Shown piece by piece: positions 4,435-64,000 of a stretch of DNA of 64,000 bases; the stretch's first letter is position 1; each line of letters opens with the position of its first letter. The stretch comes from Macrostomum lignano (taxonomy: Eukaryota). The translations under genes were made by a program, and so were the position numbers. Location of the stretch: positions 310,001 through 374,000 of the forward strand of contig NIVC01000085.1 of the NCBI GenBank assembly GCA_002269645.1, in the 5' to 3' direction. Under the pieces are notes generated by a model, which searched no databases, had not been told where the DNA came from, and saw nothing but the letters and a program-made list of their open reading frames with translations.

Positions 4435-6115
<1,681 letters not shown>

Positions 6116-12600: not shown

Positions 12601-12726
12601 ACTAACAGCGTGCCAGAAACCGGAAACGAGCCAGTCGCAGGGATTCAGACACCCGTGCCTGAAGAAGCCGTTCAGCTGAGAAGGAGCCTCAGAAACCGAT
12701 CCGCTCATGAGCGCTTTGTGCCTTAA
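9631..12726 (+). CDS. Gag(C-terminal)-Pol polyprotein: CCHC knuckle, protease, RT, RNase H, integrase
   Basis: One open frame from 9631: CSKCGKKNHFSTVC knuckle, QIDTGASVSV protease, IYQDDILI RT, TTDAS and EREALAIVWA RNase H, H..H..CPDC zinc motif plus D,D(35)E integrase. Order PR-RT-RH-IN indicates Gypsy. Confidence 0.96.
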   Translation, partial: NVTLQSHPEGRCPAFGKSCSKCGKKNHFSTVCKSRSMHYTTTCEEDSDSAQQKTDVLHLIDALNSIEVSMETVRINDKPFKMQIDTGASVSVLSSAQWALLGKPPLMRSNRRLEAFDGHVMKSLGKVTATVELRGRLQPVELIVVSSEKTYGLLGRDLLESDGVFHASDVQAEKTAVEPLPCIRGVKARMELVDGAKPQFCRARAVALALESQISAELDRLHQLGVIEPTEGPVSYASPVVWVKKKDGTLRMCADYSVHVNSKIKSDSYPIPHIETMFSKLKNAKTFATVDLRSAYWQIELDEAARDLSVINTSRGLYRVNRLQMGMKNASFIFQRTMESILGDIKGLLIYQDDILIHAPDKPTLEKRLAAVRTRLSEKRVTINEAKSISYCDSVSFLGFRISAAGIQPDDRLVEKIRHVCPPANKSELAHFLGLVNFFGRLIPNFAGKTAPLNRLRQASVPFVWSGDCSKAFESLKLEIASAPVVQPYSLTKELTLTTDASKGALAAVATQDGHPVIYVSRSLSSAESNYSNIEREALAIVWAIARLKHYFHGRPFTIRTDHQPLIRLFGSGSGVPVDASARIGRWALYLMQFDYRIQYACGSSIPHVDALSRLRFDDSSSDDKATFETINSIAFESPVIDAKRITAEMELDALTQRILNRVRQGDWRNCSQAEAQFKKVSNKLTLENGLLYMQRRVFIPPRLRKAAFDAIHDTHTGMHAAHSLMSTSCWWPGMQQDVAQFVRRCPDCCRLRPQLGHDRDRWPPSTYPFQRVHMDWAYVKGAGNILVIVDSFSGWIEAFPCRDRTADSVIQCLRTVFTRFGVPELVVSDNAPEFTTEVLTSWLRANGAKKLESPTYYPQANGAAERAVQTVKSALRAWSEKITHMEFSRFLQKVLLHHRNSASSRGCCPAEILFGRRLRVPVVTNFEQGDSVIYAPSSSSVGNPAKFVMTAGQNTAWILADDGLRLASTNQLAPMATRPSEFEMEDEDETNSVPETGNEPVAGIQTPVPEEAVQLRRSLRNRSAHERFVP

Positions 12727-13057
12727 ACTGGTATCCGAGGAGGGTTGAAAAAAAACGCGAAACTAATGAAACGACATGAAACGACTTCACTGTTCCAATC
12801 GACATCTGAATATAGGGAGGGGCATGTGGTGTATCGCACACTGAGATGCACTATAGTTTATATAAGTTCAAGTTCGTTATTCTATGCCGTTTGTTTGCAC
12901 TAATCGCCTCTAAGCATTCTATCGCTACAGTTTCTTCTATGGTAATTAACCCAGCCCAAAGTTCCTAGAGCTCACCTTCTGATCTCTCTCAAATAAGAAA
13001 TATAAAGAATCTTAAGCTCATGAGTTAAATACTTCAGCCGGAGTTCAATTCACAACA
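9635..13057 (+). mobile_element. 5'-truncated Ty3/Gypsy LTR retrotransposon (Mag-like) inside minisatellite A
   Basis: Gag end plus pol ORF. Polypurine tract agggagggg at ~12814-12822. 3' LTR 12825-13057 (tgtgg..caaca). The 5' LTR and most of gag are absent. Confidence 0.93.
12825..13057 (+). repeat. 3' LTR of Gypsy element 1 (233 bp)
   Basis: TG..CA termini, directly after a PPT and directly before the resumed satellite. Confidence 0.8.
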
Positions 13058-13308
13058 GATACCAATGTCACCTGTTAGATACTGATGTCACCTGTTAGAT
13101 ACTAGTGTCACCTGTTAGATACTGATGTCACCTGTTAGATACTAGTGTCACCTGTTAGATACTGATGTCACCTGTTAGATACTGATGTCACCTGTTAAAT
13201 ACTGATGTCACCTGTTAGATACCGGTGTCACCTGTTAGATACTGATGTCACCTGTTAGATACTGATGTCACCTGTTAGATACTGATGTCACCTGTTAGAT
13301 ACTGATGT
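13058..13308. repeat. 20-bp minisatellite A, right part
   Basis: Direct. Confidence 0.97.
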
Positions 13309-13913
13309 AAAGTGTCGCTGGCAAGCCCAACCGACCATTCTCCATCTGTTTCGAGTTCATCAACAGAAAATCCTCAGTTATAAGCATTTTTCTGCAAAAT
13401 ATTTGCCATACAATTGCAAACTGAATTGAAAATCGTCAGAGAGCTCCGCTTGATTTCCAGGCCTCAGCTCTGCCCTCCCTCCCCTCTCCATCTCTCTCCC
13501 CTCGTTTCTCAGCTGCCCCACCCCTGCCCACTGACAATGCACTTGCTATGCCGAGCACGCAGCCACATTCAGCTCTCATTGTTTAACTCAGCAGAGCTCG
13601 CAGCATCTCACTGCTCCTGCATCTCTCACCCCGCTGAGCAGAGCAGCTGCCGGGCCCCCTGGCACCCAATCAGGCCTCAAACACAGCCGCTGGGTCAGAG
13701 AAGAGAATCGGCCTCATTCCATTAAAACAAATTTCTCTGCACAGGGAGAGCTCAGAGATTTCAGTCCGTGACAGCGGCACTTTTGCTGCTGCTGCTGAGC
13801 TGGCAAGCAAATTCGCTTGAAGAAGAGCAAAGCACTCAGTTTGAAGCCGTGTGGAACAGCTGCGGCAGACAGCAGATCGGCAGAGAAGCGCTGCTAGGAG
13901 AAGCAGTGCAGCC

Positions 13914-16900
13914 ATGGCAACGCAGATAAAGCGGAAGCTGAGAGCGGCGCTGGAGGCTGGAGACAGCGAGGAGCTGCAGCGACTGTGCGGTGAGGTGGGC
14001 AGCAACATCTGGCTGGAGGTGGGCGGCTTCGACAAGCAAAACTTTCCCTTTGAAGAGCTTTGCATGCCGCTGGCCCATCACGTGGCCTGCAAGCCTGTGA
14101 GTTCGTCGTGCCTGGAGCTGCTGATTGACAGATTCGGACGCGACTGTCTGACACATGGAAATGGTAGAGGGCAGACTCCAGTGCATTTGGCTGCCCAGCA
14201 TCAGGACGAATCTTGGATGGAGCTGGTTGAAGAGAAGGGAAGCAAAGGCTGCTTGAGAATTGTCAGTGGATGGAGAAGGGCAGTCGCTCACTTTGCCGCT
14301 ATGAACAGAAAAAGCAACTCTTGTCTGAAGTGGCTGGTGAAGGAGCTCGGCAGCGACTGTCTCACAGTTCCTGACAAATACGGTGACATGGCCGTCCATT
14401 TGGCCGCTCAGCATCAGGGAATCGAGTCGCTGGAGTGGATCAAGAGACAGATCGGAACTGACTGCTTTCGGCTGAAGGGATTTAGGGATAGAACAGCATT
14501 TCACTTTGCTGCTGAGAAGTCTGACAATTCAATGCTTAAGTGGCTGGTGAAGGAGCTCGGCAGTGACTGTCTCACAGTTCCTAACTCTAGAGGTGACACG
14601 GCCGTCCATTTGGCCGCTGAGCATCAGGGCATCGAGTCGCTGGAGTGGATCAAGAGACAGATCGGAACTGACTGCTTTCGGCTGAAGGGATTTTTGGATA
14701 GAACAGCATTTCACTTTGCTGCTCAGAAGTCTGAAAATTCAATGCTGAAGTGGCTGGTGAAGGAGCTCGGCAGCGACTGTCTCGCAGTTCCTGACAAATA
14801 CGATACCACGGCCGTCCATTTGGCCGCTCAGCATCAGGGCATCGAGTCGCTGGAGTGGATCAAGAGACAGATCGGAACTGACTGCTTTCGGCTGAAGGGA
14901 TTTTTGGATAGAACAGCATTTCACTTTGCTGCTCAGAAGTCTGATAATTCAATGCTGAAGTGGCTGGTGAAGGAGCTCGGCAGCGACTGTCTCACAGTTC
15001 CTGATAGATCCGGTGACACGGCCGTCCATTTGGCCGCTCAGCATCAGGGCATCGAGTCGCTGGAGTGGATCAAGAGACAGATTGGAACTGACTGCTTTCG
15101 GCTGAAGGGAGATGGTGATAGAAGAACATTTCACTTTGCTGCTAAGAAGTCTGACAATTCAAATCTGAAGTGGCTGGTGAAGGAGCTCGGCAGCGACTGT
15201 CTCACAGTTCCTGACAAATACGGTTACACGGCCGTCCATTTGGCCGCTCAGTGGCAGCCAGTCGACTCTCTTCAGTTCATTTTTGACCAAATCGGAGCCG
15301 AAATGTTCAGCTTGAAGAACAAGGATGGCGAAACACCGGCTGATGTTGTTGAGAGTCAGTGGCGGGACGCAGACGAGTCAGCAAAGCGGGCCTGGATTTC
15401 CTCCACGCAGCGGCGGCTCGAAGCCTCTCGGCCTCCCGCTGGCAGCTCAGCGCCGACTGCCGCCTCAGCTGGGTGAGTCCTGACTGAGAACTGCTGCTTG
15501 ACACTGAAAATACTGAAAATATTGTTTGGCGAAATTTCATTGCGCTTTGATGATCGGCGCCCTGAAATTCTCAGCAGCGCCGCAGTCAAGCGAGGGCGTC
15601 ATGAATCTGACAGTGAAGCTCCCCATGGCGCCCCCAGTCTCCTAATGGGCCCCAACCCCCACCCATAGCTCAATTTGCATCAAAGCATCAGCGAGTTCAA
15701 GTGCCATCAAAGTCTCCGAAGTTTCAAACTCTCCGATTTTATTAGGAATGTATTTGGTGTGATGTTCAAAATATTGGCACTTGAATGATTTGAGAGCCTC
15801 CAATCTCTTCGTGGCCCGCAATCTCCCGATCGCGCCATATATAGCGCCACAGGTGACGCAGAAGGGTGGTGACGCAGAAGGGTGGTGACATAGAAGGGTG
15901 GTGACGCAGAGGGGTGGTGACGGAGAAGTGCGGTGACGCAGAAGGGTGGTGACGCAGAAGGCTGAGTGACTCCAAAGTGCTCAGAAAGCCCCAAGCAACT
16001 CAAAATTCATCGAATTCCTACATTTCATGATTCAGCGCCAAGAAGCAGCTGAACCCCAGCTTCACCGACTGGGACTTCATCCTGCAGGACGAAAAGAAGC
16101 AGCTCATCGGCCGTGGCGGATTCGGTGAGGTGTACAAGGCCCTAACAGACCTCAACCAGACGGTGGCTGTCAAGGTGCTGCCCCTGAGCGGCACCGGCCA
16201 ATCGAGAAAGCTGCAGAAAGCCGTCGAGATGGAGAAGCGGGGAGTTGAGATCCTCAAGCGACTCTCGCATCCCAACATTCTGCAGTTCCTCAAGTGCGAG
16301 CAGAAGTCGGATGGGCTGTACATCTTCACCGAGCTGGTCTCGGGTCACAGCCTCTTTGAGCTGATGCAGCGTCAGAACAAGCCGTTCAAGGAGTCCGGGG
16401 TCAGGGACTTCTCCAGACAGGTGCGTCTCTGAGTTCTCTGGCGTTGCCTGGCATGGGTGGGATCAGTGTGGGATCAGTGTGAGATCGGTGTGGGATCAGT
16501 GTGGGATCAGTGTAGGATCAGTGTGGGATCAGTGTGGGATCAGTGTGGGTGGGAGCAGGTATGGGGTCTCATGACTACTCAAAACTGCTCCACCTGCAGA
16601 TCTGCTCAGGCCTGAACTTCCTGCACTGCCAGCCGGAGGGCGCCATCTTGCACCGTGACATCAAGAGCTCCAATGCGATGCTCACCAGCAAAGGCGTCAT
16701 CAAGCTGATCGACTTTGGCCTCGCCAAGGAGATCGTCGGCACCTGCGGCCTGAGCACAGGCGTCGATCCCAAAGGCACCCCCTACTTCATGGCGCCCGAG
16801 CTGTTCATGGGCGAGGGCGGTTCGATTCCGTACTCAGCCAAGACCGACGTGTGGGCCTTCGGCTGCACCGTGTATGAGCTGACGGCCATGCAGCCTCCTG

Positions 16901-17085
16901 ACGCGAACGTTCAGCAGTTCAGGATCGCCGTGCTGAGGTGCGGAGGGCGGGCGATGCCTCGGATTGCGGACGGGTTCTCAGCCGGCCTGAAGGACTTCTA
17001 CCTCAGGTGCGTAGACTATGACCCGAGGAAGCGAGCGGACACCGCGGAGCTGCTGCGGCACAGCTTCCTGAGTGCCTCATCGTGA
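13914..17085 (+). CDS. Ankyrin-repeat + Ser/Thr kinase (MAP3K/STE11-like) gene A, 3 exons
   Basis: Exons 13914-15472 (ankyrin array of 210-bp units, donor gtgagt, phase 2), 16036-16420 (GRGGFG, VAVK, phase 0) and 16600-17085 ([26 protein letters not shown]). All junctions are in frame. Confidence 0.88.
15855..15962. repeat. 16-bp intronic tandem repeat (gcagaagggtggtgac)n
   Basis: Direct; lies in intron 1 of gene A. Confidence 0.85.
16455..16548. repeat. 11-bp intronic repeat (gtgtgggatca)n
   Basis: Direct; lies in intron 2 of gene A. Confidence 0.85.
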
Positions 17086-49880: not shown

Positions 49881-52800
49881 CTACTGCCGCTGTTGAACAG
49901 GTGGCAAGTCGTTGATCTCCGAGATCTCCTCCATGAATTTGGAAATTTCCATCATATCCAAATCAGGCAGGTCCAGGTCGTCTGAGGAATGAGAAAAAAA
50001 GTGGAAAAAAACTATAAATTCGTTTTTGTTTATACTACTTATGACTGCTGTTGAATTAGTAGTATAAACCATAGCAAAAATGTGCAGATTTTTGCAAAAA
50101 TAATGAAAATAAATACCCGGGATTGGCGACTCTTCCTCCCGCTCAGGATGCTGCGGCGGAAGCTGAGACACCGCACCGAATGCCCCGTCAAGTAGGCCGC
50201 TGCTGCACTGCGGACAGGCAAGCCGATTAAAGAAGACATCCGCCGCCAGCTCGTTGTTGCCGCTGGTGTCGGCGAAACGAAGCTCGCACTGGATTCGTTC
50301 GGCCTCGGCCAGCGCCACGGCTGGCGGCAACTGCAGCTGCAGCTCCAGCAGATTCTGCGGGCAGACGGGCGGGCAGCCGAGAGTTTATGAAGAGCTGGGA
50401 GGCTGTGTGTGGCTCAGCAACTGAGGATCTGGGAGGCTGGCCCAGCAACTGAGGATCTGGGAGGCTGTGGCCTAACAACTGAGGATCTGGGAGGCTGGCC
50501 CAGCAAGTGGGACCTGGGAGGCTGGCTCAGCAACTGAGGATCTGGGAGGCTGGCTCAGCTGCTGAGGATCTGGGAGGCTGGCTCAGCAACTGAGGATCTG
50601 GGAGGCTGGCTCAGCAACTGAGGATCTGGGAGACTGGCGCCCAGCAACTGAGGATCTGGGAGGCTGGCCCAGCAACTGAGGATCTGGGAGGCTGGCCCAA
50701 CAACTAAGGATCTGAGAGGCTGGCCCAACAACTGAGGATCTGGGAGGCTGGCCCAGCAACTGAGGATCTGGGAGGCTGGCCCAGCAACTGAGGATCTGGG
50801 AGGCTGGCTCAGCAACTGAGGATCTGGGAGGCTGGACCAGCAACTGGGGATCTGGGAGGCTGGCTCAGCAACTGAGGATCTGGGAGGCTGGCCCAGCAAC
50901 TGAGAATCTGGGAGGCTGGCCCAGCAACTGAGGATCTGGGAGGCTGGCCCAGCAACTAAGGATCTGAGAGGCTGGCCCAACAACTGAGGATCTGGGAGGC
51001 TGGCTCAGCAACTGAGGATCTGGGAGGCTGGCCCAGCAACTGAGGATCTGGGAGGCTGGCCTAGCAACTGACACTCTGGGAGGCTGGCCCAGCATCTGCA
51101 TGAGGATCTGGGAGGCTGGCCCAGCAACTGAGGATCTGGGAGGCTGGCTCAGCTGCTGAGGATTTGGGAGGCTGGCTCAGCAACTGAGGATCTGGGAGGC
51201 TGGCACAGCAACTGAGGATCTGGGAGACTGGCGCCCAGCAACTGAGGATCTGGGAGGCTGGCCCAGCAACTGAGGATCTGGGAGGCTGGCCCAGCAACTG
51301 AGGATCTGGGAGGCTGGCCCAACAACTAAGAATCTTAGAGGCTGGCTCAGCAACTGAGGATCTGGGAGGCTGGCCCAGCAACTGAGGATCTGGGAGGCTA
51401 GCCCAGCAACTGAGGATCTGGGAGGCTGGCCCAACAACTAAGGATCTGAGAGGCTGGCCCAACAACTGAGGATCTGGGAGGCTGGCTCAGCAAGTGGGAT
51501 CTGGGAGGCTGGCCCAACAACTATGGATCTGGGAGGCTGGCTCAGCAACTGAGGATCTGGGAGGCTGGCTCAGCAACTGAGGATCTGAGAGGCTGGCTCA
51601 GCAACTGAGGATCTGGGAGGCTGGCCCAGCAACTGAGGAGCTGGGAGGCTGGCCAAGGAACTAAGGATCTGGGAGGCTGGCTCAGCAACTGAGGATCTGG
51701 GAGGCTGGCCCAGCAACTGAGGATCTGGTAGGCTGGCCAAGGAACTAAGGATCTGTGAGGCTGTGGCCCAGCAACTGAGGATCTGGGAGGCTGTGGCCCA
51801 GCAACTGAGGAGCTGGGAGGCTGTGGCCCAGCAACTGAGGATCTGGGAGGCTGTGGCCCAGCAACTGAGGAGCTGGGAGGCTGTGGCCCAACAACTAAGG
51901 ATCTGGGAGGCTGGCCCAGCAACTGAGGATCTGGGAGGCTGGCCCAGCAACTGAGGATCTAGTAGGCTGGCCAAGGAACTAAGGATCTGAGAGGCTATGG
52001 CCCAGCAACTGAGGATCTGGGAGGCTGTGGCCCAGCAACTGAGGATCTGGGAGGCTGGCCCAGCAACTGAGGATCTGGGAGGCTGGCCCAGCAACTGAGG
52101 ATCTGGGAGGCTGGCCCAGCAACTGAGGATCTAGTAGGCTGGCCAAGGAACTAAGGATCTGAGAGGCTGGCCCAGGAACTGAGGAGCTGGCAAGGGTGGC
52201 CCAGCAATGGAGGATTCGGTTTTAAAGGCCCAGATGACGCAGAGCAGCAGGAGAAGCACACAGAGAACAAGGGACTCACAGCCCTGACAGCTTTGTGCTG
52301 AACATCAGCAATCGGCTCCTCCTGATGCGGGCTCGCCAGCCACATGTTATAATTGCCAGAACCTGGATTTGTTACAATTGCAGAGTTGATTTTTTAAGAT
52401 TTCAAAAATAAAACAACAATGCTCGATAAGCCTACTGTAAGTAGACAGACAGCACATAAATTACTCACGCGCCAGGCCTTCAATATGCAGCCAAGCTTTT
52501 TGCTGAGTTGGCACCATCGGCAGACAGTCGGGCATCATCAGCGACTTCGGTGTAATTCGCACAGCCCTGTGCTGTCCTAAGTAGCATAGATAGCAAATTC
52601 GTTTAGAATAGTGACGGAATTACAATAAAACGGCTAAGTTAAAAAACATTCAGCGAAACCCACTGTAGATGGCTTCAGTAACGATTCGAATGCAGTTGCC
52701 AGTTGGCTCGTGGTGGAACACGAAGGCCAGGTGCACGCTCTCCAGCAATGATATATGGCGCGTGTACACGTCGTGAGCAGTTTGGGTGAATTCTGCCGAT

Positions 52801-54159
52801 ATGTATCGAAAGTATACATTGTAGAGCAATAATTACTACAATATAGGAAAGAAAGTTGCTGCAATTTGAGGGACTCACGGTGGAGAAACGGCACCTCGCC
52901 AGTTTGCAGGCGGTTGGCGATGGCCTGGCGCAGGGCCTCGTGATTTCGCTTGACGCAGAAAATTGCGATGTCGCTCAGCCTGCGCGATAAAAAATGGATT
53001 AATGGATTATCTCTTCCCAGTGTTTAATACCCAGGGTGCTTCCCTTATGCCTTTCATTATAAGCCCTAACACATCGCTTTCTTGCGATCCCGCATCCACT
53101 TTGTGTGATCCCACACACCCGTCTGTGATCTCACATCCCCTTTCCTGTGATCTCACATCCCCTTTCCTGTGATCTCACATCCCCTTTCCTGTGATCTCAC
53201 ATCCCCTTTCCTGTGATCTCACATCCCCTTTCCTGTGATCTCACATCCCCTTTCCTGTGATCTCACATCCCCTTTCCTGTGATCTCACATCCCCTTTCCT
53301 GTGATCCCATATTTCTTTCCTGTGATCTCACATCCCCTTTCCTGGGATCTCATATTTCTTTCCTATGATCCCACATCCCCTTTCCTGTGATCCCATATTT
53401 CTTTCCTGTGATCCCACATTTCTTTCCTGTGATCCCACATTTCTTTCCTGTGATCCCACATTTCTTTCCTGTGATCTCATATTTCTTTCCTGTGATCCCA
53501 CATCCCCTTTTCTGTGATCCCATATCTCCTTTCCTGTGATCCCATATTCCTATCAGTGATCCCATATCCCTATCAGTGATCCCATATTCCTATCAGTGAT
53601 CCCATATCCCTATCAGTGATCCCATATTCCTATTAGTGATCCCAAATCCGTTTCCTGTGATCCCAAATCTCCTTCAGCGGTTCCACATTCCCGCCAATGA
53701 TCCCAAACCATTTGAGCCGTCCTCTTGCCCTCAGTAACCCCGATTCCCCTATAATGATGGTTATCATACCCCAATCTTTTGAAAGTCCCAGAGTCTCTAG
53801 TCAAATGACCCCCCCCCCACTGCTCACTCGACCAGCAGCCCGACCCTGCCATCCTCAAATGTGAGGCTGGGCATTTCGTAGCGACCCCGGAAGATGCCGT
53901 TCTCGCAGCCGCTGCCCACCATGAAGTAGGGATGGATGAGACCCTCCGAGCTGACGGTGGACACGGTGACCGAGATGGAGCCTTGCAGGTAAGGAGCCGA
54001 AGCTGCATCGGTGGACAGACAGGCGGTCACGTACTTGGACCGATTGTACGGCTGCCGACTGTACAAGATTGAGCGAGCCTTCTCAGTGACAAACCGAAAT
54101 CTGTACTCTTGCTGAGGCTGGTCCACGATGGAGGCGGAGAGTTGACATTGAGCAGTCAT
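49881..54159 (-). CDS. Divergent Rel-homology-domain (RHD+IPT; NF-kB/NFAT-like) transcription factor, Rel-2, 7 exons
   Basis: Exons 54159-53828, 52979-52879, 52792-52664, 52576-52469, 52362-52280, 50354-50117 and 49981-49881; all six GT-AG junctions are phase-consistent. Rel-like motifs occur in the correct order: [86 protein letters not shown]. Acidic tail. Family call by eye; the true start may lie further upstream. Confidence 0.75.
50410..52205. repeat. 28-bp intronic minisatellite (ggcccagcaactgaggatctgggaggct)n, 1.8 kb
   Basis: Direct; fills the intron between Rel-2 exons 5 and 6. Confidence 0.97.
53125..53665. repeat. 22-bp intronic minisatellite (tttcctgtgatctcacatcccc)n and derivatives
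   Basis: Direct; lies in Rel-2 intron 1. Confidence 0.93.
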
Positions 54160-54344
54160 GCTCTGGTTGTCAGGGGGCAGCGTCTGCAGGTTGCCATGAC
54201 GGCTAGATCATTATTGATATGTTGACATCTCAATTGAGTCACTTGAAGAACTTAAAATAAAATTCTATTTTTCTGATTCCATGATAACTAGATAGGCCAA
54301 CTTAGGCATATTTTCTATTGTAGGTTAAAATTCTATGTCAGTCA

Positions 54345-54742
54345 CTAAAGAAGCGTCATGTCAGTCATAAAATAATTGTAATGTCAGACATAAAGAATCG
54401 TCATGTCAGTCATTAAAGAAGCGTCATGTCAGTCATAAAAGAAGCGTCATGTCAGACATAAAAGAAGCGTCATGTCAGTCATAAAAGAAGCGTCATGTCA
54501 GTCATAAAAGCGTCATGTCAGACATAAAAGAAGCGTCATGTCAGTCATAAAAGAAGCGTCATGTCAGACATAAAAGAATCGTCATGTCAGTCAATAAAGA
54601 ATCGTCATGTCAGTCATAAAAGAAGCGTCATGTCAGACATAAAAGAAGCGTCATGTCAGACATAAAAGAAGCGTCATGTCAGACATAAAAGAAGCGTCAT
54701 GTCAGACATAAAATAAGCGTCATGTCAGTCATAAAAGAAGCG
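54345..54742. repeat. 23-bp minisatellite (gcgtcatgtcagtcataaaagaa)n
   Basis: Direct; lies between the two Rel genes. Confidence 0.95.
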
Positions 54743-55281
54743 TTTTTTGCTTACTAACAGGGGGCACCTTCTTCTTTTACAAAGTGTTGTGACAAATTCT
54801 TAACAAACCAAAATTAAACAAGGCGAAAAGCAAACTATACCTTGAATAGTTCAAAGAAAAGTACTGGCGCTTTGGTGTAATTGGTTTGCTGAAGCGTGTT
54901 GAAAAAAATTAACTTTAAAGGCACATACACTGTTGCTACTTTAAGTAGCACAGCATGGTGAAAATAAGGCGTACGGTTGCTTTAAAGTACATTGTACACA
55001 GGAAATTATCAACAAGGATTTGATAATCCTAAAAAATTTGGTCACGTCACAATGGTTAGTCAAAAATGAGATGATCAAAACGTACAAAATCGTTCAAGTA
55101 AATCCCTAGAATATCCTAATAGAATCAATCAGAACAACACGCGTTGTGTACAAGAAGCCAAACTATCAGTAGGGTAAATAGTTCTGCTTTAATATAATAG
55201 CAATAATATTGATTTTTCTTAGAAGATAAAATTCCTGACTTTTATGTTGAATTTGAGCACAAAAACTGCGATTACTGGCAG

Positions 55282-55732
55282 TTAAGGATTACTCAAAAAG
55301 GCCATAAGGTCCTCTTCTAGCCCGATGCTGCGCAGAGCATCCACCACAGCCGGGTCACCGGCAGAGTTGAGATTTTGATCGGCTGCCGCTGGTCTCTTGC
55401 GCTTGGACTGCGGCCCTGCAAAGGGACAATTTTATGCCGGTTTTACAAGCATATTTCAAGGTCAAATTTCATATTTCAGTTACATGTAAGTCAAACAAAT
55501 TTCCCCAAAACTCACCAGCATCCTGAGATAGAAACCTGCATCCGCAGTGGCTGCAGCTGTCGGTCAGCACAATGTCCAGGCAGCTGTCCACCTCGCTGCG
55601 GAGGTCCTTCACAACTAGCTGGCCACGGAGGCGCTCGCAGCTGAAATTGCTGCCGATTAGAGTCTGCCGCAGGTCTGGCGTCACGATGGAGAGCAGATGC
55701 TGCGGGGCGGCGTTGTGGGGGCTGGGTGAATG

Positions 55733-55780
<48 letters not shown>

Positions 55781-55847
55781 GTCAGACAGACAGTCACACA
55801 GACAGACAGACAGACACTCAGTCAGACAGACAGACAGACAGACACTC

Positions 55848-55900
<53 letters not shown>

Positions 55901-56021
55901 CTCAGTCAGACAGACAGACAGACAGACAGACAGACACTCAGTCAGACTGACAGATAGACAGACAGTCAGACAGTCAGACAGACAGACAGACACAGTCAGA
56001 CAGTCAGACAGATAGACAGAC

Positions 56022-56074
<53 letters not shown>

Positions 56075-56422
56075 ACAGACATAGCAAAGTACCTTTTGCA
56101 CTTTTTCAATCCGAGCCGGCTGACTGAGATCGGTGTCCGGGATGCACAGGCTCACCTGATACTGGCTCTTGTCCTCGTCTGCAATTTGTAGCGAGGTAAA
56201 AAATAAAAATGCACCTCTATCAATTAAAAGTACATAACAAACTTATAAGAGTGATGGAATAGCGCTCTCACGAGGCAGCGGATCCTTGCGGAGGTCCTTC
56301 ACAACTAGCTGGCCACGGAGGCGCTCGCAGCTGAAATTGCTGCCGATTAGAGTCTGCCGCAGGTCTGGCGTCACGATGGAGAGCAGATGCTGCGGGGCGG
56401 CGTTGTGGGGGCTGGGTGAATG

Positions 56423-56470
<48 letters not shown>

Positions 56471-56537
56471 GTCAGACAGACAGTCACACAGACAGACAGA
56501 CAGACACTCAGTCAGACAGACAGACAGACAGACACTC

Positions 56538-56590
<53 letters not shown>

Positions 56591-56711
56591 CTCAGTCAGA
56601 CAGACAGACAGACAGACAGACAGACACTCAGTCAGACTGACAGATAGACAGACAGTCAGACAGTCAGACAGACAGACAGACACAGTCAGACAGTCAGACA
56701 GATAGACAGAC

Positions 56712-56764
<53 letters not shown>

Positions 56765-57283
56765 ACAGACATAGCAAAGTACCTTTTGCACTTTTTCAAT
56801 CCGAGCCGGCTGACTGAGATCGGTGTCCGGGATGCACAGGCTCACCTGATACTGGCTCTTGTCCTCGTCTGCAATTTGTAGCGAGGCAAAAATACCTGCA
56901 TCTACTAAATACATCCATGTAAAACATATTGAGTGATGGAATAGCGCTCTCACGAGGCAGCGGATCCTTGAAATAGATCCAGACATCTTGACCACCGCAC
57001 AAGCTGCCTTCCGGAGGCAGCACCGAGTCAATGTTGAGCTTCACCAGCTGCTCTGCGGTTTGATGAAGACAATTGAAAATAATCAAGTAATTAAGAGAAT
57101 CTATAAGCTATAGCAGTTTAGACTAGAAGAACTCACTGATATCGGAAACAACATCTGTGACTGCATTAGCAAATTGATGGGGACTGGCCTGCAGAGCCCC
57201 ATCCTTGTCAACAAAGTGCAGCTTAAAGGCCAGTCTCAACTGGTTCAGGTTTCTAGACGTGTACTTCACGTCTTGCAAGTTCT
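55282..57283 (-). CDS. Second Rel-homology gene (Rel-1): RHD C-terminal part + IPT + KRKR NLS; 5' exons not resolved
   Basis: Exons 57283-57137 (NLNQLRLAFKLHF), 57052-56954 (LNIDSVLPPEGSLCGGQDVWI), 56868-56783, 56389-56272, 56178-56093, 55699-55516 and 55415-55282 (GPQSKRKR..SNP*). Phases are consistent and match the Rel-2 intron pattern. Confidence 0.72.
55598..56970. repeat. ~690-bp tandem duplication inside Rel-1 (two exons + (GACA)n intron)
   Basis: 55598-56287 and 56288-56970 are near-identical, including the interruption pattern of the microsatellites at 55730-56075 and 56420-56765. Confidence 0.95.
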
Positions 57284-59381
57284 CTGCAAATGGTTAGCGA
57301 TTTGGTAACATAAATCTGCATGGGTTATGACGTACATCAGCCCTAACAGGTCATGACCTTAGCCCCGCGTTTAGTGGCCCTAAAACTTTATTTATGGTTT
57401 ATGGCATGTACACTTCACTGTGCCTTGGGTTGGCCCTCAAGCTGGGAGTTAATTGCACGAGCAGAGCCAAGCCGAGATTCCAATTCAGTCCCCAGATCAA
57501 TGCGACTGCACTTTGGAATCGAGCCTGGGCCGCTGGTACATCAGACCACTGGGCAACCCCACATGCCCTTCGGTGACACCCGGTCGCTTTTGTTGCACAT
57601 GTTTCAGGAGCTATCAGCTAAATGAACTCAATGCAACTCACTTCCATATGGATTGAAGCCGAGTTCGTTGCGTTTCCTAATTGCGGCAGCCAATTTTGCG
57701 CCAAGTTTGCCAACACAAATTAGCAAAACTTTTTCTAAACTGAAATTTAGAATGAAAATTATCAACTTTTTAGAGACTCAACATAATGAGCTTTACGATA
57801 CATATCGGGAGGGGTTCAATTCAAATAATTTTTATATTGTTTGCATAAAGGTACATATTCTCGGTTAAGGCTTGAAAACATACATATCGATACCTATCGG
57901 TTGAGGTTTAAAACTAGCTAATAAAATTTATACATATCGGTTTAGGTTCAAATACCAATACGCTCGTAGACAAAACTTCAAAACATAATTTTTGAGGTTT
58001 ACAAATTGATTGATAAATTTTCGATACACATCGCCTGATGGGAAATCTGGAGAGGTGTTGGAGGCTCACTTTCGTTATGTTATCTTCCGCAACGATTGCA
58101 TCATCTACAACGTCTCCCCTCTCGGGTCATTGCTGCTTACTCATTGGACAAACGGGAATTTCGGTTGCACTGAAAGCGAGCTGGTGGGATATTTTTCGTC
58201 GACATGGCACGAACGCGCGGTCTCTCCAGTGGCCTCTGATCCTCAGGTCTCTGATTGTCCGACTTGGCAATTCTCGATCCGATAGCTGCCTAGTGGCCTG
58301 GTGCAGATCATCAGCGTTTCAAGTGAGTGTTGGCCGGAAGTGGATACGGTTTCTCCGTAGTGTTAGGCCACAATAGCATGACTTGATCGGGCAGTCGCGG
58401 TGTTTGCCAACCGCAACCACCATATGCCCTCCGCTGCCACAGCTTGGTTGTCGGGTCTTGGGTAGCACCACGGTCGAGCCAATTGTGATTCTGTCGAAGG
58501 CTTATCTTGGACTTGTTGCACTGCTGCATCACTCTCTTGTGAATTTCAGATTCTTGATGTGTTCCTTACTACCAAGACTTTCTCAGTAATCAAGGAACAA
58601 TCACTTCTAGCTTCTTTGCTAGGCAACCCAGTAATCAACTGCAGGTATTTAATTACCTTAATTCGGATTCGCAGTGTCTTCCTTTGTCTCCTGGAGAGTT
58701 CTATTCCGTAGGTCTCGTCTGTGGATCTCTTAGTTGATCTCGTAGATCAGGCGCTTTGATTCTTCAGTCGCTTCTGGTCCTGGTTCCTCTTGTACTTCCG
58801 ACGAAGTTCCTTCCGGCCCGTATCTTCAGTCAGGACCAATCAGAGGCCTCGTATCAAACAATGGGATCCCTGCGCCGAATAGCGGTTTCTCTTTAGCCTT
58901 CTCCTTCTAGTAGTGCCTCTCTGCACTCTAGGTAATGCCCCAGTTATCTCTAATAGACCCTCTAAGATCTATTAGGGTAGTCCTTCGGGCGACTACTGCC
59001 AATGGAGTCTCAATGGACTCAAGAGTCTCAACAGACTCAACTAGACTCAAGTCACACTAGACTTGAGTGATTTGTCTCAAACACAGGCGCAAATGAGAAA
59101 GGCTTACCGCAACAACTCGACCGAGTCTCGATTGACTTGGTAACCAGGAAGTCTCGCTAAGGGCTTCCTCTTCGGAGCGCTCCTCTTTCGTGGGGAGTAT
59201 GACTCCGGTACCGCTTTGGACCGCTTGTATTTATAGACGATTTTGTGGGCCAAAAATAGTAACATGACTCATGTGCAAAAATAGTAACGTGATTCATCCG
59301 CTAAAAATAGTAACATGAATCATCCTTAAGCTTAGGTGCGTATGCGTGTACTTACTTACTTATAGTAGATTAACACTTTGA

Positions 59382-60389: not shown

Positions 60390-61823
60390 CTGTTAGATAC
60401 TGATGTCACCTGTTAGATACTGATGCCACCTGTTAGATACTGATGTCACCTGTTAGATACTGATGTCACCTGTTAGATAGTGATGTCACCTGTTAGATAC
60501 TGGTGTCACCTGGTAGATACTGGTGTCACCTGTTAGATACTGATGTCACCTGTTAGATACTGATGTCACCTGTTAGATACTGATGCCACCTGTTAGATAC
60601 TGATGTCACCTGTTAGATACTGGTGTCACCTGTTAGATACTGGTGTCACCTTTTAGATACTGATGCAAGGACCACTAGAAGTTACCGCTGTATCAGGACG
60701 CAATACTCGTAAATATTGTAAAATTATTTGAAGGCCCGCTTGTTTGCATTGCAGCTAAACTTTAAATGCTCATAACTCCGGACTGGTTGCACTTAGAAAG
60801 ATAATTTTTTCGCCAGGTTGCTCGAAATTTTGTTCTCTTTAACATGAGTTTTGCAGTTTTGAAACAAAATTAACATGAAACATGTAGGAGCGGCGGGCGT
60901 ACAGTTAAGTAACGGCAATACGCAATATTTCATTGCAGTCAAAATGAAAAGTTTCAGTTATTTTAACCATTGCTTCCTAGTCTCGATAAAGTAGCAGACC
61001 ATACAACATACTCTGTAGTTTGGAAGCTTTATAAAGCGGATAATCTGTACAGAGTTCAGTAGGCTCCAAAGGCGTCACTTCACTATCAAAAACCAGTATT
61101 ATCAAAATCAGGAAGGCGCAGTATTTTTGAAATCTTGGAACACCTGCCCAACAAGGACTCCAACATTCATAATCTTTTGCTGTTCAAATGAACAGTAGGA
61201 GTCAAATAAAACTTGTACAGTAGCACAACTTTATTTGTATTTAAGTTCAATTTCGCTATAAAAACCTCTAATTTCATAAAGAATACATGCGAAATAAGAA
61301 AACAAACTCAGAAAGTAACAATAAGTCAATGTACTTTAAACTTAAACTTTCATACCAATCAAGTCATTCTGTCTAAAAAATCTCTTAAAGTCACAAAGCA
61401 TAATGAATCATAGTACTTCACCATGTTAGCTCAGCAGACATTGATGAATGAACATCTAGATTGGATGGTCCTTGTACTGATGTCACCTGTTAGATACTGG
61501 TGTCACCTGTTAGATACTGGTGTCACCTGTTAGATACTGGTGTCAGCTGTTAGATACTGGTGTCACCTGTTAGATACTGGTGTCACCTATTAGATACTGG
61601 TGTCACCTGTTAGATACTGATGTCACCTGTTAGATACTGGTGTCACCTGTTAGATACTGATGTCACCTGTTAGATACTGATGTCACCTGTTAGATACTGG
61701 TGTCACCTGTTAGATACTGATGTCACCTGTTAGATACTGATGTCACCTGTTAGATATTGATGTCACCTGTTAGATACTGATGTCACCTGTTAGATACTGA
61801 TGTCACCTGTTAGATACTGATGT
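60390..61823. repeat. 20-bp minisatellite A (second locus), split by a hAT-type insertion
   Basis: Arrays at 60390-60665 and 61475-61823. Confidence 0.96.
60666..61474. mobile_element. Non-autonomous hAT-type element (809 bp)
   Basis: TIR caaggacca / tggtccttg. 8-bp TSD tactgatg (60658-60665 and 61475-61482). AT-rich, non-coding interior. Confidence 0.85.
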
Positions 61824-62434
61824 AAAGTGTCGCTGGCAAACCCAAGCGACCATTCTCCATCTATTTCGAGTTCAGCAACAGAAAATCCTCAGTTATAAGC
61901 ATTTTTCTGCAAAATATTAGCCATAAAATTGCAAACTGAATTGAAAATCGTCACAGAGCTCCGCTTGATTTCCAGGCGTCAGCCCTGCCCTCCCTCCCCT
62001 CTCCATCTCTCTTCCCTCGTGTCTCAGCTGCCGCCCCTTCACCCCTGCCCACTGGCAATGCACTTGCTATGCCCAGCACGCAGCCACAGTCAGCTCTCAT
62101 TGTTTAACTCAGCAGAGCTCGCAGCATCTCACTGCTCCTGCATCTCTCACCCCGCTGAGCAGAGCAGCTGCCGGGCCCCCTGGCACCCAATCAGGCCTCA
62201 AACACAGCCGCTGGGTCAGAGAAGAGAATCGGCCTCAGTCCATTTAAACAAATTTCTCTGCACAGGGAGAGCTCAGAGATTTCAGTCCGTGACAGCCGGA
62301 CTTTTGCTGCTGCTGCTGAGCTGGCAGGCAAATTCGCTTGAAGAAGAGCAAAGCACTCAGTTTGAAGCCGTGTGGAACAGCTGCGGCAGACAGCAGATCG
62401 GCAGAGAAGCGCTGCTAGGAGAAGCCGTGTAGCC

Positions 62435-64000
62435 ATGGCAACGGAGATGGAGCGGAAGCTGAGAGCGGCGCTGGAGGCTGGAGACAGCGAGGAGCTGCAG
62501 CGACTGTGCGGTGAGGTCGGCAGCAACATCGAGCTGGAGGTGGGCGGGTTCGACGAGCAAGACTATCCCTATTTTACAGAGATTCTTGTAATGCCGCTGG
62601 CCCATCACGTGGCCTGCAAGCCGGTGAGTTCGTCGTGCCTGGAGCTGCTGATTGACAGATTCGGACCCGACTGTCTGACACATGGACATGATAGGGGCAA
62701 GACTCCAGTGCACTTTGCTGCTCAGCATCAGGACGAATCTTGGATGAAGCTGGTTAAAGAGAAGGGAGGCAGAGGCTGCTTGAGAATTGTCAGTGGATGG
62801 AGAGAGACAGTCGCTCACTTTGCCGCTATGAACAGAAAAAGCAACTCTTGTCTGAAGTGGATGGTGAAGGAGCTCGGCAGCGACTGTCTCACAGTTCCTG
62901 ACGAATTCGGTGACACGGCCGTCCATTTGGCCGCTCAGCATCAGGGCATCGAGTCGCTGGAGTGGATCAAGAGACAGATCGGAACTGGCTGCTTTCGGCT
63001 GAAGGGAGAAGGTGATAAACGAACATTTCACATTGCTGCTCAGAAGTCTGACAATTCAATGCTGAAGTGGCTGGTGAAGGAGCTCGGCAGCGACTGTCTC
63101 ACAGTTCCTGACGAATTCGGTGACACGGCCGTCTATTTGGCCGCTCAGCATCAGGGCATCGAGTCGCTGGAGTGGATCAAGAGACAGATCGGAACTGACT
63201 GCTTTCGGCTGAAGGGAGATGATGATAGAACAGCATTTCACTTTGCTGCTCAGAAGTCTGACAATTCAATGCTGAAGTTGCTGGTGAAGGAGCTCGGCAG
63301 TGACTGTCTCACAGTTCCTGACATAGACGATGACACAGCCGTCGATTTGGCCGCTCAGCATCAGGGCATCGAGTCGCTGGAGTGGATCAAGAGACAGATC
63401 GGAACTGACTGCTTTCGGCTGAAGGGATTGTGGGATAGAACAGCATTTCACTTTGCTGCTCAGAAGTCTGACAATTCAAATCTGAAGTGGCTGGTGAAGG
63501 AGCTCGGCAGCGACTGTCTCACAGTTCCTGACTATTGGGGTACCACGGCCGTCCATTGGGCCGCTGAGCATCAGGGAATCGAGTCGCTGGAGTGGATCAA
63601 GAGACAGATCGGAACTGACTGCTTTCGGCTGAAGGGAGATGATGATAGAACAGCATTTCACATTGCTGCTAAGAAGTCTGACAATTCAAATCTGAAGTGG
63701 CTGGTGAAGGAGCTCGGCAGCGACTGTCTCACAGTTCCTGACCAATGCGGTGACACGGCCGTCCATTTGGCCGCTCAGCATCAGGGCATCGAGTCGCTGG
63801 AGTGGATCAAGAGACAGATCGGAACTGACTGCTTTCGGCTGAAAGGAAGGCTCGATAGAACAGCATTTCACATTGCTGCTAAGAAGTCTGACAATTCAAA
63901 TCTGAAGTGGCTGGTGAAGGAGCTCGGCAGCGACTGTCTCACAGTTCCTGACCAATGCGGTGACACGGCCGTCCATTTGGCCGCTGTGCATCAGCCAGTC
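62435..64000 (+). CDS. Ankyrin-repeat gene D (paralogue of gene A exon 1), runs off the window
   Basis: ATG at 62435 ([17 protein letters not shown]..). The frame stays open through six VPD-containing 70-aa units to the window end. Upstream 61475-62435 is homologous to 13058-13914. The kinase exons are presumed to lie beyond the window. Confidence 0.9.
   Translation, partial: MATEMERKLRAALEAGDSEELQRLCGEVGSNIELEVGGFDEQDYPYFTEILVMPLAHHVACKPVSSSCLELLIDRFGPDCLTHGHDRGKTPVHFAAQHQDESWMKLVKEKGGRGCLRIVSGWRETVAHFAAMNRKSNSCLKWMVKELGSDCLTVPDEFGDTAVHLAAQHQGIESLEWIKRQIGTGCFRLKGEGDKRTFHIAAQKSDNSMLKWLVKELGSDCLTVPDEFGDTAVYLAAQHQGIESLEWIKRQIGTDCFRLKGDDDRTAFHFAAQKSDNSMLKLLVKELGSDCLTVPDIDDDTAVDLAAQHQGIESLEWIKRQIGTDCFRLKGLWDRTAFHFAAQKSDNSNLKWLVKELGSDCLTVPDYWGTTAVHWAAEHQGIESLEWIKRQIGTDCFRLKGDDDRTAFHIAAKKSDNSNLKWLVKELGSDCLTVPDQCGDTAVHLAAQHQGIESLEWIKRQIGTDCFRLKGRLDRTAFHIAAKKSDNSNLKWLVKELGSDCLTVPDQCGDTAVHLAAVHQPV

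What the first reader, a model, noticed from the sequence alone, without database searches (positions are those of the whole stretch)
49881..57283. Two cryptic, highly divergent Rel/NF-kB-like genes hidden among minisatellite-filled introns
Seen: small exons that the ORF track misses join with consistent phases (six junctions in Rel-2, six in Rel-1), and both genes share one intron pattern. Known: the motif order matches RHD+IPT proteins. Rel-2's DNA-recognition loop [13 protein letters not shown] is a hybrid: it has Rel-type RFR but lacks the redox Cys, ending in xTE as NFAT does. Rel-1 has a p65-like KRKR NLS right after the IPT, and Rel-2 ends in an acidic/hydrophobic activation-like tail. 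Both carry an extra CxxC after the IPT. Inference: a lineage-specific Rel expansion. This would be notable if the host is a flatworm, a group where canonical NF-kB is often reported as missing.
Basis: partly seen in the sequence, partly recalled or inferred. Interest (0 to 1): 0.85.

Follow-up and report, generated by a model that had tools for sequence, protein, structure and literature searches.

The report
Divergent Rel-family genes in a flatworm

Summary
On the minus strand, seven exons (54159-49881) join through six GT-AG introns into a 363-aa protein. It is identical to GenBank BOX15_Mlig027515g3 of Macrostomum lignano, a gene model built from RNA-seq. Pfam RHD_DNA_bind scores just under threshold (24.5 vs 27 bits). 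Membership is secured through paralogues (42-89 bits), a family profile that hits p65/RelB/c-Rel at about 1e-14 (NFATc1 0.15), and fold matches. Duplicate copies differ by 19 synonymous and 1 non-synonymous codon change, so the gene is under purifying selection.

"Rel-1" is real but incomplete here. I found one further exon (57739-57642). The exon that encodes the DNA-recognition loop is absent from the window. No gene is called there in GenBank.

A complete six-gene tandem RHD array lies about 64 kb away on the same contig, so this is a lineage-specific Rel expansion. It is not cryptic: UniProt already names the 363-aa protein "RHD domain-containing protein", and divergent RHD genes were reported in planarians in 2026. 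I rate it a new member of a known kind, of moderate interest.

The parts
53828..54159 (-). Rel-2 exon 1. The start ATG is at 54159-54157. The exon encodes the N-terminal RHD core, including the recognition loop [13 protein letters not shown] (54120-54082) and the [13 protein letters not shown] motif.
   Evidence: Pfam RHD_DNA_bind scores 18.9 bits on this exon alone. The annotated transcript 5' end, 54183, sits right after a CAG acceptor, which fits SL trans-splicing; that link is inference.
52879..52979 (-). Rel-2 exon 2 ([33 protein letters not shown]). It matches the p65 stretch [29 protein letters not shown].
52664..52792 (-). Rel-2 exon 3, the end of the N-terminal RHD domain (..[14 protein letters not shown]..).
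   Evidence: With this exon joined, the Pfam alignment spans residues 10-177.
52469..52576 (-). Rel-2 exon 4: the linker (YRQHRAV) and the first strands of the Ig-like C-terminal domain.
52280..52362 (-). Rel-2 exon 5, the middle of the Ig-like domain.
50117..50354 (-). Rel-2 exon 6: the last strands of the Ig-like domain, CPQC at 50216-50205, then an acidic stretch at the position where paralogues carry KRKR.
49881..49981 (-). Rel-2 exon 7: an acidic/hydrophobic C-terminal tail, modelled as a helix, and the TAG stop.
53070..53674 (.). 22-bp minisatellite (28.5 copies) in Rel-2 intron 1.
50410..52215 (.). 28-bp minisatellite (63.7 copies) that fills Rel-2 intron 5.
57642..57739 (-). Rel-1 exon 2 (LEKVLLICVGKLGAKLAAAIRKRNELGFNPYG). 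It needs an upstream phase-2 exon that is not in the window.
57137..57283 (-). Rel-1 exon 3, the end of the N-terminal RHD domain.
56954..57052 (-). Rel-1 exon 4, the start of the Ig-like domain (LVKLNIDSVLPPEGSLCGGQDVWIYFKDPLP).
56783..56868 (-). Rel-1 exon 5, first copy.
56093..56389 (-). Products of the tandem duplication: a chimeric exon (56389-56272: 5' part of exon 6 fused to the 3' end of exon 4) and a second copy of exon 5 (56178-56093). If spliced, they stay in frame.
   Evidence: The homologous loci L001 and L005 lack the duplication.
55516..55699 (-). Rel-1 exon 6: the end of the Ig-like domain and CSHC (55555-55544).
55282..55415 (-). Rel-1 exon 7: the KRKR basic cluster (55404-55393), an acidic/hydrophobic tail, and the TAA stop.
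57887..58033 (.). A tandem repeat of about 45 bp from Rel-1 intron 1. Collinearity with the other copies of the locus ends here, so this is the likely breakpoint of the duplicate.

Best explanation
The window is Macrostomum lignano scaffold NIVC01000085.1, positions 310001-374000. It carries a partial second copy of the distal end of a six-gene tandem array of ankyrin-free Rel-homology genes.

Rel-2 (Mlig027515g3) is a complete, transcribed gene under purifying selection. Its protein has an N-terminal RHD DNA-binding domain, then an Ig-like IPT/TIG domain of the Rel dimerisation type, a CxxC motif and an acidic amphipathic tail.

Inferred mechanism: Rel-2 works as a dimeric, sequence-specific transcription factor of the RelA/c-Rel/Dorsal class. 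The recognition loop RFRFVTE would contact DNA, the Ig-like domain would mediate dimerisation, and the acidic tail would recruit co-activators. Rel-2 has lost the KRKR nuclear localisation signal that its paralogues keep. It therefore probably reaches the nucleus, or is regulated, through heterodimers with those paralogues.

Rel-1 in this window is a 5'-truncated, internally duplicated copy of Mlig028098. It lacks the recognition-loop exon and is probably non-functional here. Intact copies exist elsewhere in the assembly.

Shown: gene structure, family membership, fold, selective constraint and the genomic arrangement. Inferred: DNA binding, dimerisation, transactivation and the mode of nuclear import. 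The confidence of 0.85 applies to the identity and structure claims; I put the inferred mechanism at about 0.55.
For: Identity and transcript support: Rel-2 is 100% identical to PAA91487.1, and the GenBank models derive from RNA-seq.

Family membership:
- Pfam RHD_DNA_bind gives E=3.1e-5 and 24.5 bits over residues 10-177. The score rises from 18.9 bits when the exons are joined.
- phmmer against PDB finds p65 at E=0.0019, with the loop, HPH..VG..C.DG and CVKK..L..AI..R....NPF aligned.
- An exhaustive HMMER search links Rel-2 to M. lignano paralogues at E=2.6e-11 to 1e-5. Five of these were scanned and score 42-89 bits on RHD_DNA_bind, as does the complete Rel-1 homologue at 55.4 bits.
- The family profile hits p65/RelB/c-Rel at 6e-15 to 3e-14, Gambif1 at 1e-11, p50 at 4e-8 and NFATc1 at 0.15. 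The alignment runs into the dimerisation domain.

Fold:
- For the full-length AF2 model, the top 28 Foldseek hits are all NF-kB chains (E from 4e-12), with NFAT next.
- The C-terminal domain modelled alone (pLDDT 74.7) has its best TM-scores with p52/RelB dimerisation domains: 0.66-0.76, RMSD 2.8-2.9 A.

Selection: across three copies Rel-2 shows 19 synonymous and 1 non-synonymous codon change. The window-specific changes are 10:0.

Rel-1 truncation: neither tblastn nor blastn finds exon 1 in the window. Collinearity with L001 and L005 stops at about 58033. No gene is called there.

Array.
Against: - Rel-2 alone stays below Pfam's gathering score, and no family member hits Pfam RHD_dimer.
- The full-length AF2 model is of low confidence (pLDDT 53.7, six-sequence alignment).
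- Foldseek E-values for the isolated C-terminal domain are weak (at least 3e-3), as is usual for a generic Ig fold.
- The recognition loop departs from the canonical RFRYxCEG (Y to F, C to T, G to K), and Rel-2 has no recognisable NLS. DNA binding and nuclear function are therefore not assured.
- In the intact same-contig copy, Rel-1 intron 1 is about 12 kb long. An exon 1 lying beyond the window end is therefore not excluded.
- No expression, binding or phenotype data were available for any of these genes.
Confidence: 0.85

Rival explanations
1. Rel-1 in this window is an intact gene. Its first exon lies more than 6.2 kb upstream, beyond the window end, across a giant intron that contains the opposite-strand ankyrin gene.
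For: The intact same-contig copy (Mlig028098g3) has an intron 1 of about 12 kb that begins and ends with the same ~45-bp repeat. Exons 2-7 of the window copy keep open frames and consensus splice sites.
Against: GenBank calls no gene over these exons, although the neighbouring Rel-2 is called. The sequence upstream of 58033 resembles neither other copy's intron 1. The window copy alone has the 690-bp internal duplication. Its window-specific codon changes are 3 non-synonymous to 2 synonymous, but these numbers are small.
Confidence: 0.25
2. Rel-2 is not a DNA-binding activator. It is a regulatory or dominant-negative Rel paralogue that titrates or escorts its array neighbours through the Ig-like dimerisation domain.
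For: The KRKR cluster, present in five aligned paralogues, is replaced by PEREEES in Rel-2. The loop has Y to F, C to T and G to K changes. Strong purifying selection shows the protein matters, whatever it does.
Against: Both loop arginines and the glutamate are kept. Rel-2 also keeps a basic CVKR pair (CVKK in p65) and an HRA linker (NRA in p65), the CVKK-like pair being absent from several paralogues. It carries an acidic amphipathic tail typical of activators.
Confidence: 0.25
3. The genes are NFAT/NFAT5-type rather than Rel/NF-kB-type RHD proteins.
For: The family loop HHRFRYE(S/T)E resembles NFAT's HHRAHYETEG (NFAT motif recalled from memory, not checked here). The loop also lacks the Rel cysteine.
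Against: The family profile scores p65/RelB/c-Rel at about 1e-14 and NFATc1 at 0.15. Foldseek ranks 28 NF-kB chains ahead of NFAT. Rel-2 has only about 9 residues before the RHD (about 12 in the complete Rel-1 homologue), which leaves no room for an NFAT-homology regulatory region.
Confidence: 0.05
4. Rel-2 is a decaying pseudogene or a repeat-associated ORF artefact.
For: It sits among minisatellites. The L001 copy has a 1-bp deletion in exon 3.
Against: Codon changes are 19 synonymous to 1 non-synonymous across three copies. All splice sites are intact and the ORF is open. The gene model is RNA-derived.
Confidence: 0.03

Closest known systems
Class II Rel proteins (RelA/p65, c-Rel, RelB; insect Dorsal/Dif/Gambif1)
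   Same: [quoted passage not shown]
- No C-terminal ankyrin repeats.
- A basic KRKR cluster right after the RHD, in Rel-1 and most paralogues.
- An acidic/hydrophobic C-terminal tail.
- Best profile and fold matches.
   Different: - Only about 16-17% identity to p65 in the structural alignments.
- The loop is RFRY-E-S/T-E (RFRFVTE in Rel-2), not RFRYxCEG, and has no redox cysteine.
- The dimerisation domain is too divergent for Pfam RHD_dimer.
- Some members have an extra CxxC after the Ig-like domain.
- Rel-2 lacks the NLS.
- The proteins are short (340-390 aa).
The seven divergent RHD transcription factors reported in the planarian Schmidtea mediterranea (Development 2026, PMC13563047)
   Same: These are flatworm RHD genes that sit on long branches and are hard to assign to NF-kB. 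The phylum and the problem are the same.
   Different: The Macrostomum genes form a tight tandem array. I found no publication on them.
Class I NF-kB (p105/p100/Relish; cnidarian, sponge and Capsaspora NF-kB)
   Same: They share the RHD.
   Different: The Macrostomum ORFs have no glycine-rich region, ankyrin repeats or death domain. Profile E-values are weaker (p50 4e-8, p100 7e-3). The ankyrin ORFs 1.1 kb downstream are a separate, generic ANK unit.
NFAT / NFAT5 (TonEBP)
   Same: They have the RHD fold. A glutamate-rich end of the loop (ETE/ESE) is also shared.
   Different: The family profile does not match NFATc1 significantly (E=0.15). There is no N-terminal regulatory region.

Membership tests
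Rel homology domain (RHD) superfamily | N-terminal RHD DNA-binding domain (Pfam PF00554) | tested here: met
   Rel-2 scores 24.5 bits directly, E=3.1e-5, just under the 27-bit cut-off. Rel-2 links to paralogues at E down to 2.6e-11, and the paralogues scanned score 42-89 bits. The family profile hits p65 at 5.7e-15. Foldseek matches NF-kB chains from 4e-12.
Rel homology domain (RHD) superfamily | Recognition loop R-x-R-Y-x-C-E-G with its DNA-contacting residues | tested here: inconclusive
   Rel-2 has R-F-R-F-V-T-E-K. Both arginines and the glutamate are kept, while Y to F, C to T and G to K are changed. Paralogues have RFRYE(S/T/K)E. Binding itself was not testable.
Rel homology domain (RHD) superfamily | C-terminal IPT/TIG dimerisation domain, by sequence (Pfam PF16179 RHD_dimer) | tested here: not met
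   Neither Rel-2 nor any of six paralogues hits RHD_dimer at E<=1. Only the PDB profile alignment runs about 30-60 residues into that domain.
Rel homology domain (RHD) superfamily | C-terminal IPT/TIG dimerisation domain, by fold | tested here: met
   The domain model has pLDDT 74.7 and seven strands. Its highest TM-scores are with p52 and RelB dimerisation domains (0.60-0.76) and NFAT TIG domains (0.59-0.68). Most other Ig-type hits score 0.3-0.55. Foldseek E-values are only about 3e-3.
Class II Rel (RelA/c-Rel/Dorsal type) | Basic NLS immediately after the RHD | tested here: met
   This verdict is for Rel-1, which has SKRKRP at 55404-55393. Paralogues have KRKRP, KRLR or KRSR. Rel-2 does not meet the feature: it has PEREEES at the aligned position. 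Function was not tested.
Class II Rel (RelA/c-Rel/Dorsal type) | C-terminal transactivation domain; no ankyrin repeats | tested here: inconclusive
   The ORFs contain no ANK repeats. Acidic/hydrophobic tails are present and the Rel-2 tail is modelled as a helix. Activation is not testable with these tools.
Class I NF-kB (p105/p100/Relish) | C-terminal ankyrin-repeat inhibitory domain in the same protein | tested here: not met
   Rel-2 stops at 49881. The ANK ORFs at 48777-47463 are separate, are not called as genes, and match only generic ANK/DARPin sequences.
NFAT family | NFAT-type RHD plus an N-terminal calcineurin-regulated NFAT-homology region | tested here: not met
   The family profile scores NFATc1 at E=0.15. 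Only about 9-12 residues precede the RHD.
Complete Rel gene (applied to Rel-1 in this window) | Presence of the exon that encodes the recognition loop | tested here: not met
   The window has no match to residues 1-108 of Mlig028098 at protein or DNA level, apart from the paralogous Rel-2 exon 1. The exon is present in L001 and L004.
NF-kB signalling module | kB-site binding, dimer formation, IkB/IKK-type regulation | not testable with these tools
   This needs EMSA or PBM, co-IP, localisation and RNAi experiments in M. lignano.

The most novel reading that the evidence does not exclude
Rel-2 is a neofunctionalised Rel paralogue without an NLS. On this reading its nuclear access and activity depend on heterodimerising with the NLS-bearing neighbours of the same tandem array. 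A basal flatworm that has no recognisable p105/IkB-type partner in these genes would then control a Rel network through paralogue pairing rather than through ankyrin inhibitors.
Probability: 0.15. Interest if true: 0.6.

Novelty: new member of a known kind. Interest (0 to 1): 0.38.

Why it matters
Flatworms are usually listed as lacking canonical NF-kB. Platyhelminthes have no p50/p105 according to PMC11432056, and PMC13563047 found no clear NF-kB homologue in Schmidtea.

This locus shows that an early-branching and genetically tractable flatworm keeps a six-gene tandem array of Rel-class genes without ankyrin repeats. Its most divergent member is under strong purifying selection.

That gives a concrete entry point for asking what Rel proteins do in flatworm immunity, wound response or regeneration, because M. 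lignano has transgenesis and RNAi.

The practical gain is limited. The sequences are already deposited and machine-labelled as RHD proteins, so what remains is functional characterisation rather than discovery.

Tried and rejected
1. Rel-1 exon 1 in the window. I ran tblastn with the complete homologue (word size 2, E<=10) and blastn (word size 7) with the L001 exon and flanks. Only the paralogous Rel-2 exon matched. A short ORF at 58205-58141 (ATG to GT donor, phase 2) could serve as an alternative first exon. It has no homology support, so I give it no weight.

2. IkB or p105-like reading of the downstream ankyrin ORFs (48777-48406, 47975-47463). Pfam shows generic ANK repeats and the best PDB matches are designed DARPins and ankyrin. 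Neither copy is called as a gene. I rejected this as evidence for an IkB.

3. A tRNA-derived SINE in the Rel-1 intron (57300-57620). ARAGORN finds no tRNA-like gene, so I dropped the idea.

4. Pfam RHD_dimer gives no hit for any family member.

5. The full-length AF2 model, built on a six-sequence alignment, is of low confidence. I modelled the C-terminal domain separately instead.

6. The profile-based third homologue search returned only M. lignano proteins, because candidate selection is word-based. I could not test orthology to the planarian RHDs.

7. Literature searches for the gene IDs, and for Macrostomum together with NF-kB, found no dedicated paper.

8. The pseudogene reading for Rel-2 is rejected by the 19:1 ratio of synonymous to non-synonymous changes.

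Full report
ORGANISM AND LOCUS

The window is eukaryotic DNA rich in mini- and microsatellites. The protein maps to scaffold NIVC01000085.1 of assembly GCA_002269645.1, and the window corresponds to positions 310001-374000 of that scaffold. Both genes lie on the minus strand.

REL-2 GENE MODEL

The seven exons are 54159-53828, 52979-52879, 52792-52664, 52576-52469, 52362-52280, 50354-50117 and 49981-49881. They join through six GT..AG introns, most with strong GTGAGT-type donors. The phases are 2,1,1,1,0,1, and the ORF is 363 codons.

The GenBank annotation of this assembly was made from a genome-guided RNA-seq transcriptome (StringTie/TACO/TBONE; PMC5730564). The exact agreement is therefore independent transcript-level support for all six junctions.

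The annotated 5' end (54183) lies directly after a CAG acceptor. This fits spliced-leader trans-splicing, which the same paper reports for 38.8% of genes; the link is my inference.

Introns 1 and 5 are filled by a 22-bp (x28.5) and a 28-bp (x63.7) minisatellite. A 23-bp array lies just upstream of the gene. The genome paper reports that tandem and simple repeats make up 15% of this genome, so the repeat-filled introns are typical of the species.

IS REL-2 A REL-HOMOLOGY PROTEIN?

Direct sequence evidence is borderline.
- Pfam RHD_DNA_bind scores 18.9 bits on exon 1 alone.
- The spliced protein scores 24.5 bits (E=3.1e-5), aligned over residues 10-177 and profile positions 2-153 of 169. The curated cut-off is 27 bits.
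- phmmer against all PDB sequences finds only p65 (6ggr_A, E=0.0019). The hallmark stretches align: [16 protein letters not shown] with [31 protein letters not shown] with HPHELVGKDCRDG, and [31 protein letters not shown] with [29 protein letters not shown].

Transitive evidence is decisive.
- An exhaustive HMMER scan of 1.84 billion representative proteins links Rel-2 to a set of proteins at E=2.6e-11 to 1e-5. One listed hit, P0015, is a low-complexity false positive. All the rest are from M. lignano.
- Five of these, together with the complete Rel-1 homologue, score 42-89 bits on RHD_DNA_bind.
- A profile of Rel-2 plus five of them hits p65, RelB and c-Rel at 6e-15 to 3e-14, Gambif1 at 1e-11, p50 at about 5e-8, p100 at 7e-3 and NFATc1 at 0.15. 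The alignments continue into the dimerisation domain.

The family is therefore nearer to class II Rel proteins than to p105/p100 or NFAT.

STRUCTURE

A full-length AlphaFold2 model built on only six sequences is of low confidence (pLDDT 53.7), but it is all-beta in two blocks. Its top 28 Foldseek hits in the PDB are all NF-kB chains (E=4e-12 to 1.4e-7, about 300-340 aligned columns). NFAT and TonEBP follow.

Modelled alone, the C-terminal 121 residues give a seven-strand Ig-like sandwich (pLDDT 74.7, pTM 0.70). Foldseek E-values are weak for such a generic fold (at least 3e-3). The best superpositions are nonetheless the p52 and RelB dimerisation domains (TM 0.60-0.76, RMSD about 2.8-3.2 A) and NFAT TIG domains (0.59-0.68). 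Most other Ig-type hits score 0.3-0.55.

No family member hits Pfam RHD_dimer. The IPT/dimerisation domain is therefore supported by fold, not by the curated sequence model.

SELECTION

Two other copies of the locus were fetched. L001 is on scaffold NIVC01000103.1. L005 lies on the same scaffold as the window, at about 431-446 kb.
- Non-coding DNA is about 88-93% identical between copies, while Rel-2 exons are 98.6% identical.
- Across the three copies, Rel-2 shows 19 synonymous and 1 non-synonymous codon change. The changes specific to the window copy are 10:0.
- The L001 copy has a 1-bp deletion in exon 3, which explains its truncated GenBank product. This may be real decay or a long-read assembly error.

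Rel-2 in the window is thus a constrained protein-coding gene.

REL-1

Their phases and positions match those of Rel-2. Three corrections are needed.

1. There is one more exon, 57739-57642 (LEKVLLICVGKLGAKLAAAIRKRNELGFNPYG).

2. The exons 56389-56272 and 56178-56093 come from a 690-bp tandem duplication.
   - Its 600-bp core, 55597-56196 = 56287-56886, is 100% identical, including an imperfect (GACA)88 array.
   - About 50 bp of intron differ between the two units.
   - The duplication is in frame. It is absent from L001 and L005.
   - It is either very recent or an assembly artefact.

3. The complete homologues are Mlig028098g1 (357 aa) and g3 (358 aa). They start with an exon that encodes MSAEQQQPCDWPSISVLEQPASHHRFRYESE...PHPYYMAGDNCEPNG. 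This exon has no counterpart anywhere in the window.

Collinearity with both other copies stops at about 58033, inside a ~45-bp tandem repeat that makes up the ancestral intron 1 of about 430 bp. GenBank calls no gene over the window's Rel-1 exons. Rel-1 exons 2-7 are less constrained than Rel-2: 13 synonymous to 9 non-synonymous changes overall, and 2:3 for the window-specific changes, which are too few to interpret.

The most likely reading is a 5'-truncated duplicate. However, intron 1 is about 12 kb in the intact same-scaffold copy. A far-upstream exon 1 beyond the window end therefore cannot be excluded; I put that at about 0.25.

GENOMIC CONTEXT

On the same scaffold, at about 490-431 kb, six RHD genes lie in tandem in one orientation:
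- Mlig020664g4 (342 aa)
- Mlig029207g2 (387 aa)
- Mlig029207g3 (341 aa)
- a 328-aa gene
- Mlig028098g3 (the complete Rel-1)
- Mlig020092g1 (a Rel-2 copy with one amino-acid difference)

Scaffold NIVC01000103.1 carries RHD genes upstream of its own Rel-1/Rel-2 pair in the stretch fetched. It also carries further members of the family.

The window therefore holds a second, partial copy of the distal end of this array: Rel-1 without exon 1, a complete Rel-2, and the downstream ankyrin ORFs. It lies about 64 kb from the full array.

LIKELY MECHANISM

Shown here:
- a two-domain RHD architecture;
- both loop arginines and the glutamate retained;
- a basic CVKR pair where p65 has CVKK;
- an HRA linker where p65 has NRA;
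- an Ig-like domain of the Rel dimerisation type;
- a CxxC directly after the last strand, which is shared with Rel-1 and Mlig020664 but not with all paralogues;
- an acidic amphipathic C-terminal helix.

Inferred: Rel-2 acts as a dimeric DNA-binding transcription factor of the RelA/c-Rel/Dorsal type.

Rel-2 differs from its paralogues in three ways. The loop tyrosine is phenylalanine. No family member has the Rel cysteine, and Rel-2 has threonine at that position. The KRKR cluster is replaced by an acidic stretch. I therefore consider it likely that Rel-2 depends on heterodimerisation with NLS-bearing paralogues. A purely regulatory role remains a live alternative, at about 0.25.

COMPARISON WITH WHAT IS KNOWN, AND NOVELTY

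- The 363-aa protein is already in UniProt as "RHD domain-containing protein" (A0A1I8IGA4, A0A1I8IKJ4 and A0A1I8JHC0). Most paralogues carry the same label.
- A 2024 survey found no p50/p105 in Platyhelminthes and lists c-Rel only for molluscs, annelids and arthropods among invertebrates (PMC11432056).
- A 2026 planarian study reports seven highly divergent RHD factors and no clear NF-kB homologue in Schmidtea (PMC13563047).
- I found no paper on the Macrostomum genes.

VERDICT

The finding is correct in substance. Rel-2 is an uncharacterised, divergent member of a known family, and it is already deposited and machine-labelled. Interest is moderate, for NF-kB evolution and for flatworm immunity and regeneration. 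It is neither a new kind of system nor a hidden gene.

Noticed in passing
window 55597-56196 and 56287-56886: A 690-bp tandem duplication lies inside Rel-1. Its 600-bp core is 100% identical, including an imperfect (GACA)88 array, yet about 50 bp of the intron part differ between the two units. It is in frame if spliced, and two other copies of the locus lack it. It is either a very recent event or an assembly artefact.
   Followed up: partly
window 48777-48406 and 47975-47463 (minus strand): Two ankyrin-repeat ORFs lie 1.1 kb downstream of Rel-2 on the same strand, separated by a 15-bp minisatellite. They are 94-98% conserved in the other copies, but no copy is called as a gene. The best matches are generic ANK/DARPin sequences, with nothing specific to IkB.
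   Followed up: partly
L001 19386-19513 (scaffold NIVC01000103.1): That copy of Rel-2 has a 1-bp deletion in exon 3 (CCACCAC to CCACAC). This frameshifts the gene and explains its truncated 206-aa GenBank product. Its neighbour Rel-1 is intact, the reverse of the situation in the window.
   Followed up: partly
L004 and L005 (scaffold NIVC01000085.1, about 490-431 kb): A complete tandem array of six RHD genes in one orientation lies about 64 kb from the window locus on the same scaffold. In that copy, Rel-1 intron 1 has grown from about 430 bp to about 12 kb and holds a 942-aa ORF on the opposite strand.
   Followed up: partly
L001 4305-5622 versus window 50410-52215: The 28-bp minisatellite of Rel-2 intron 5 also fills intron 1 of a different RHD paralogue (the P0011-like gene) in the other scaffold, at about 91% identity. 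One repeat family has colonised different introns of the array.
   Followed up: no
window 61475-64000 versus 13057-15473 (plus strand): A segmental duplicate occurs within the window. A 20-bp minisatellite followed by a long ankyrin-repeat ORF (over 540 aa) appears twice, with the aligned stretch about 94% identical. Further copies of the 20-bp array lie at 9217-9638 and 60390-60665.
   Followed up: no
window 9613-12723 (plus strand): A 1037-aa open reading frame has protease, reverse transcriptase, RNase H and integrase domains. It looks like an intact pol of an LTR retrotransposon.
   Followed up: no
window 16031-17082 (plus strand): Exons of a protein kinase (Pfam Pkinase, 111.8 bits) lie directly after the ankyrin ORF at 13845-15473.
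   Followed up: no
window 4785-6037: A (GACA)n-type microsatellite of about 1.2 kb, the same motif as in the Rel-1 intron.
   Followed up: no
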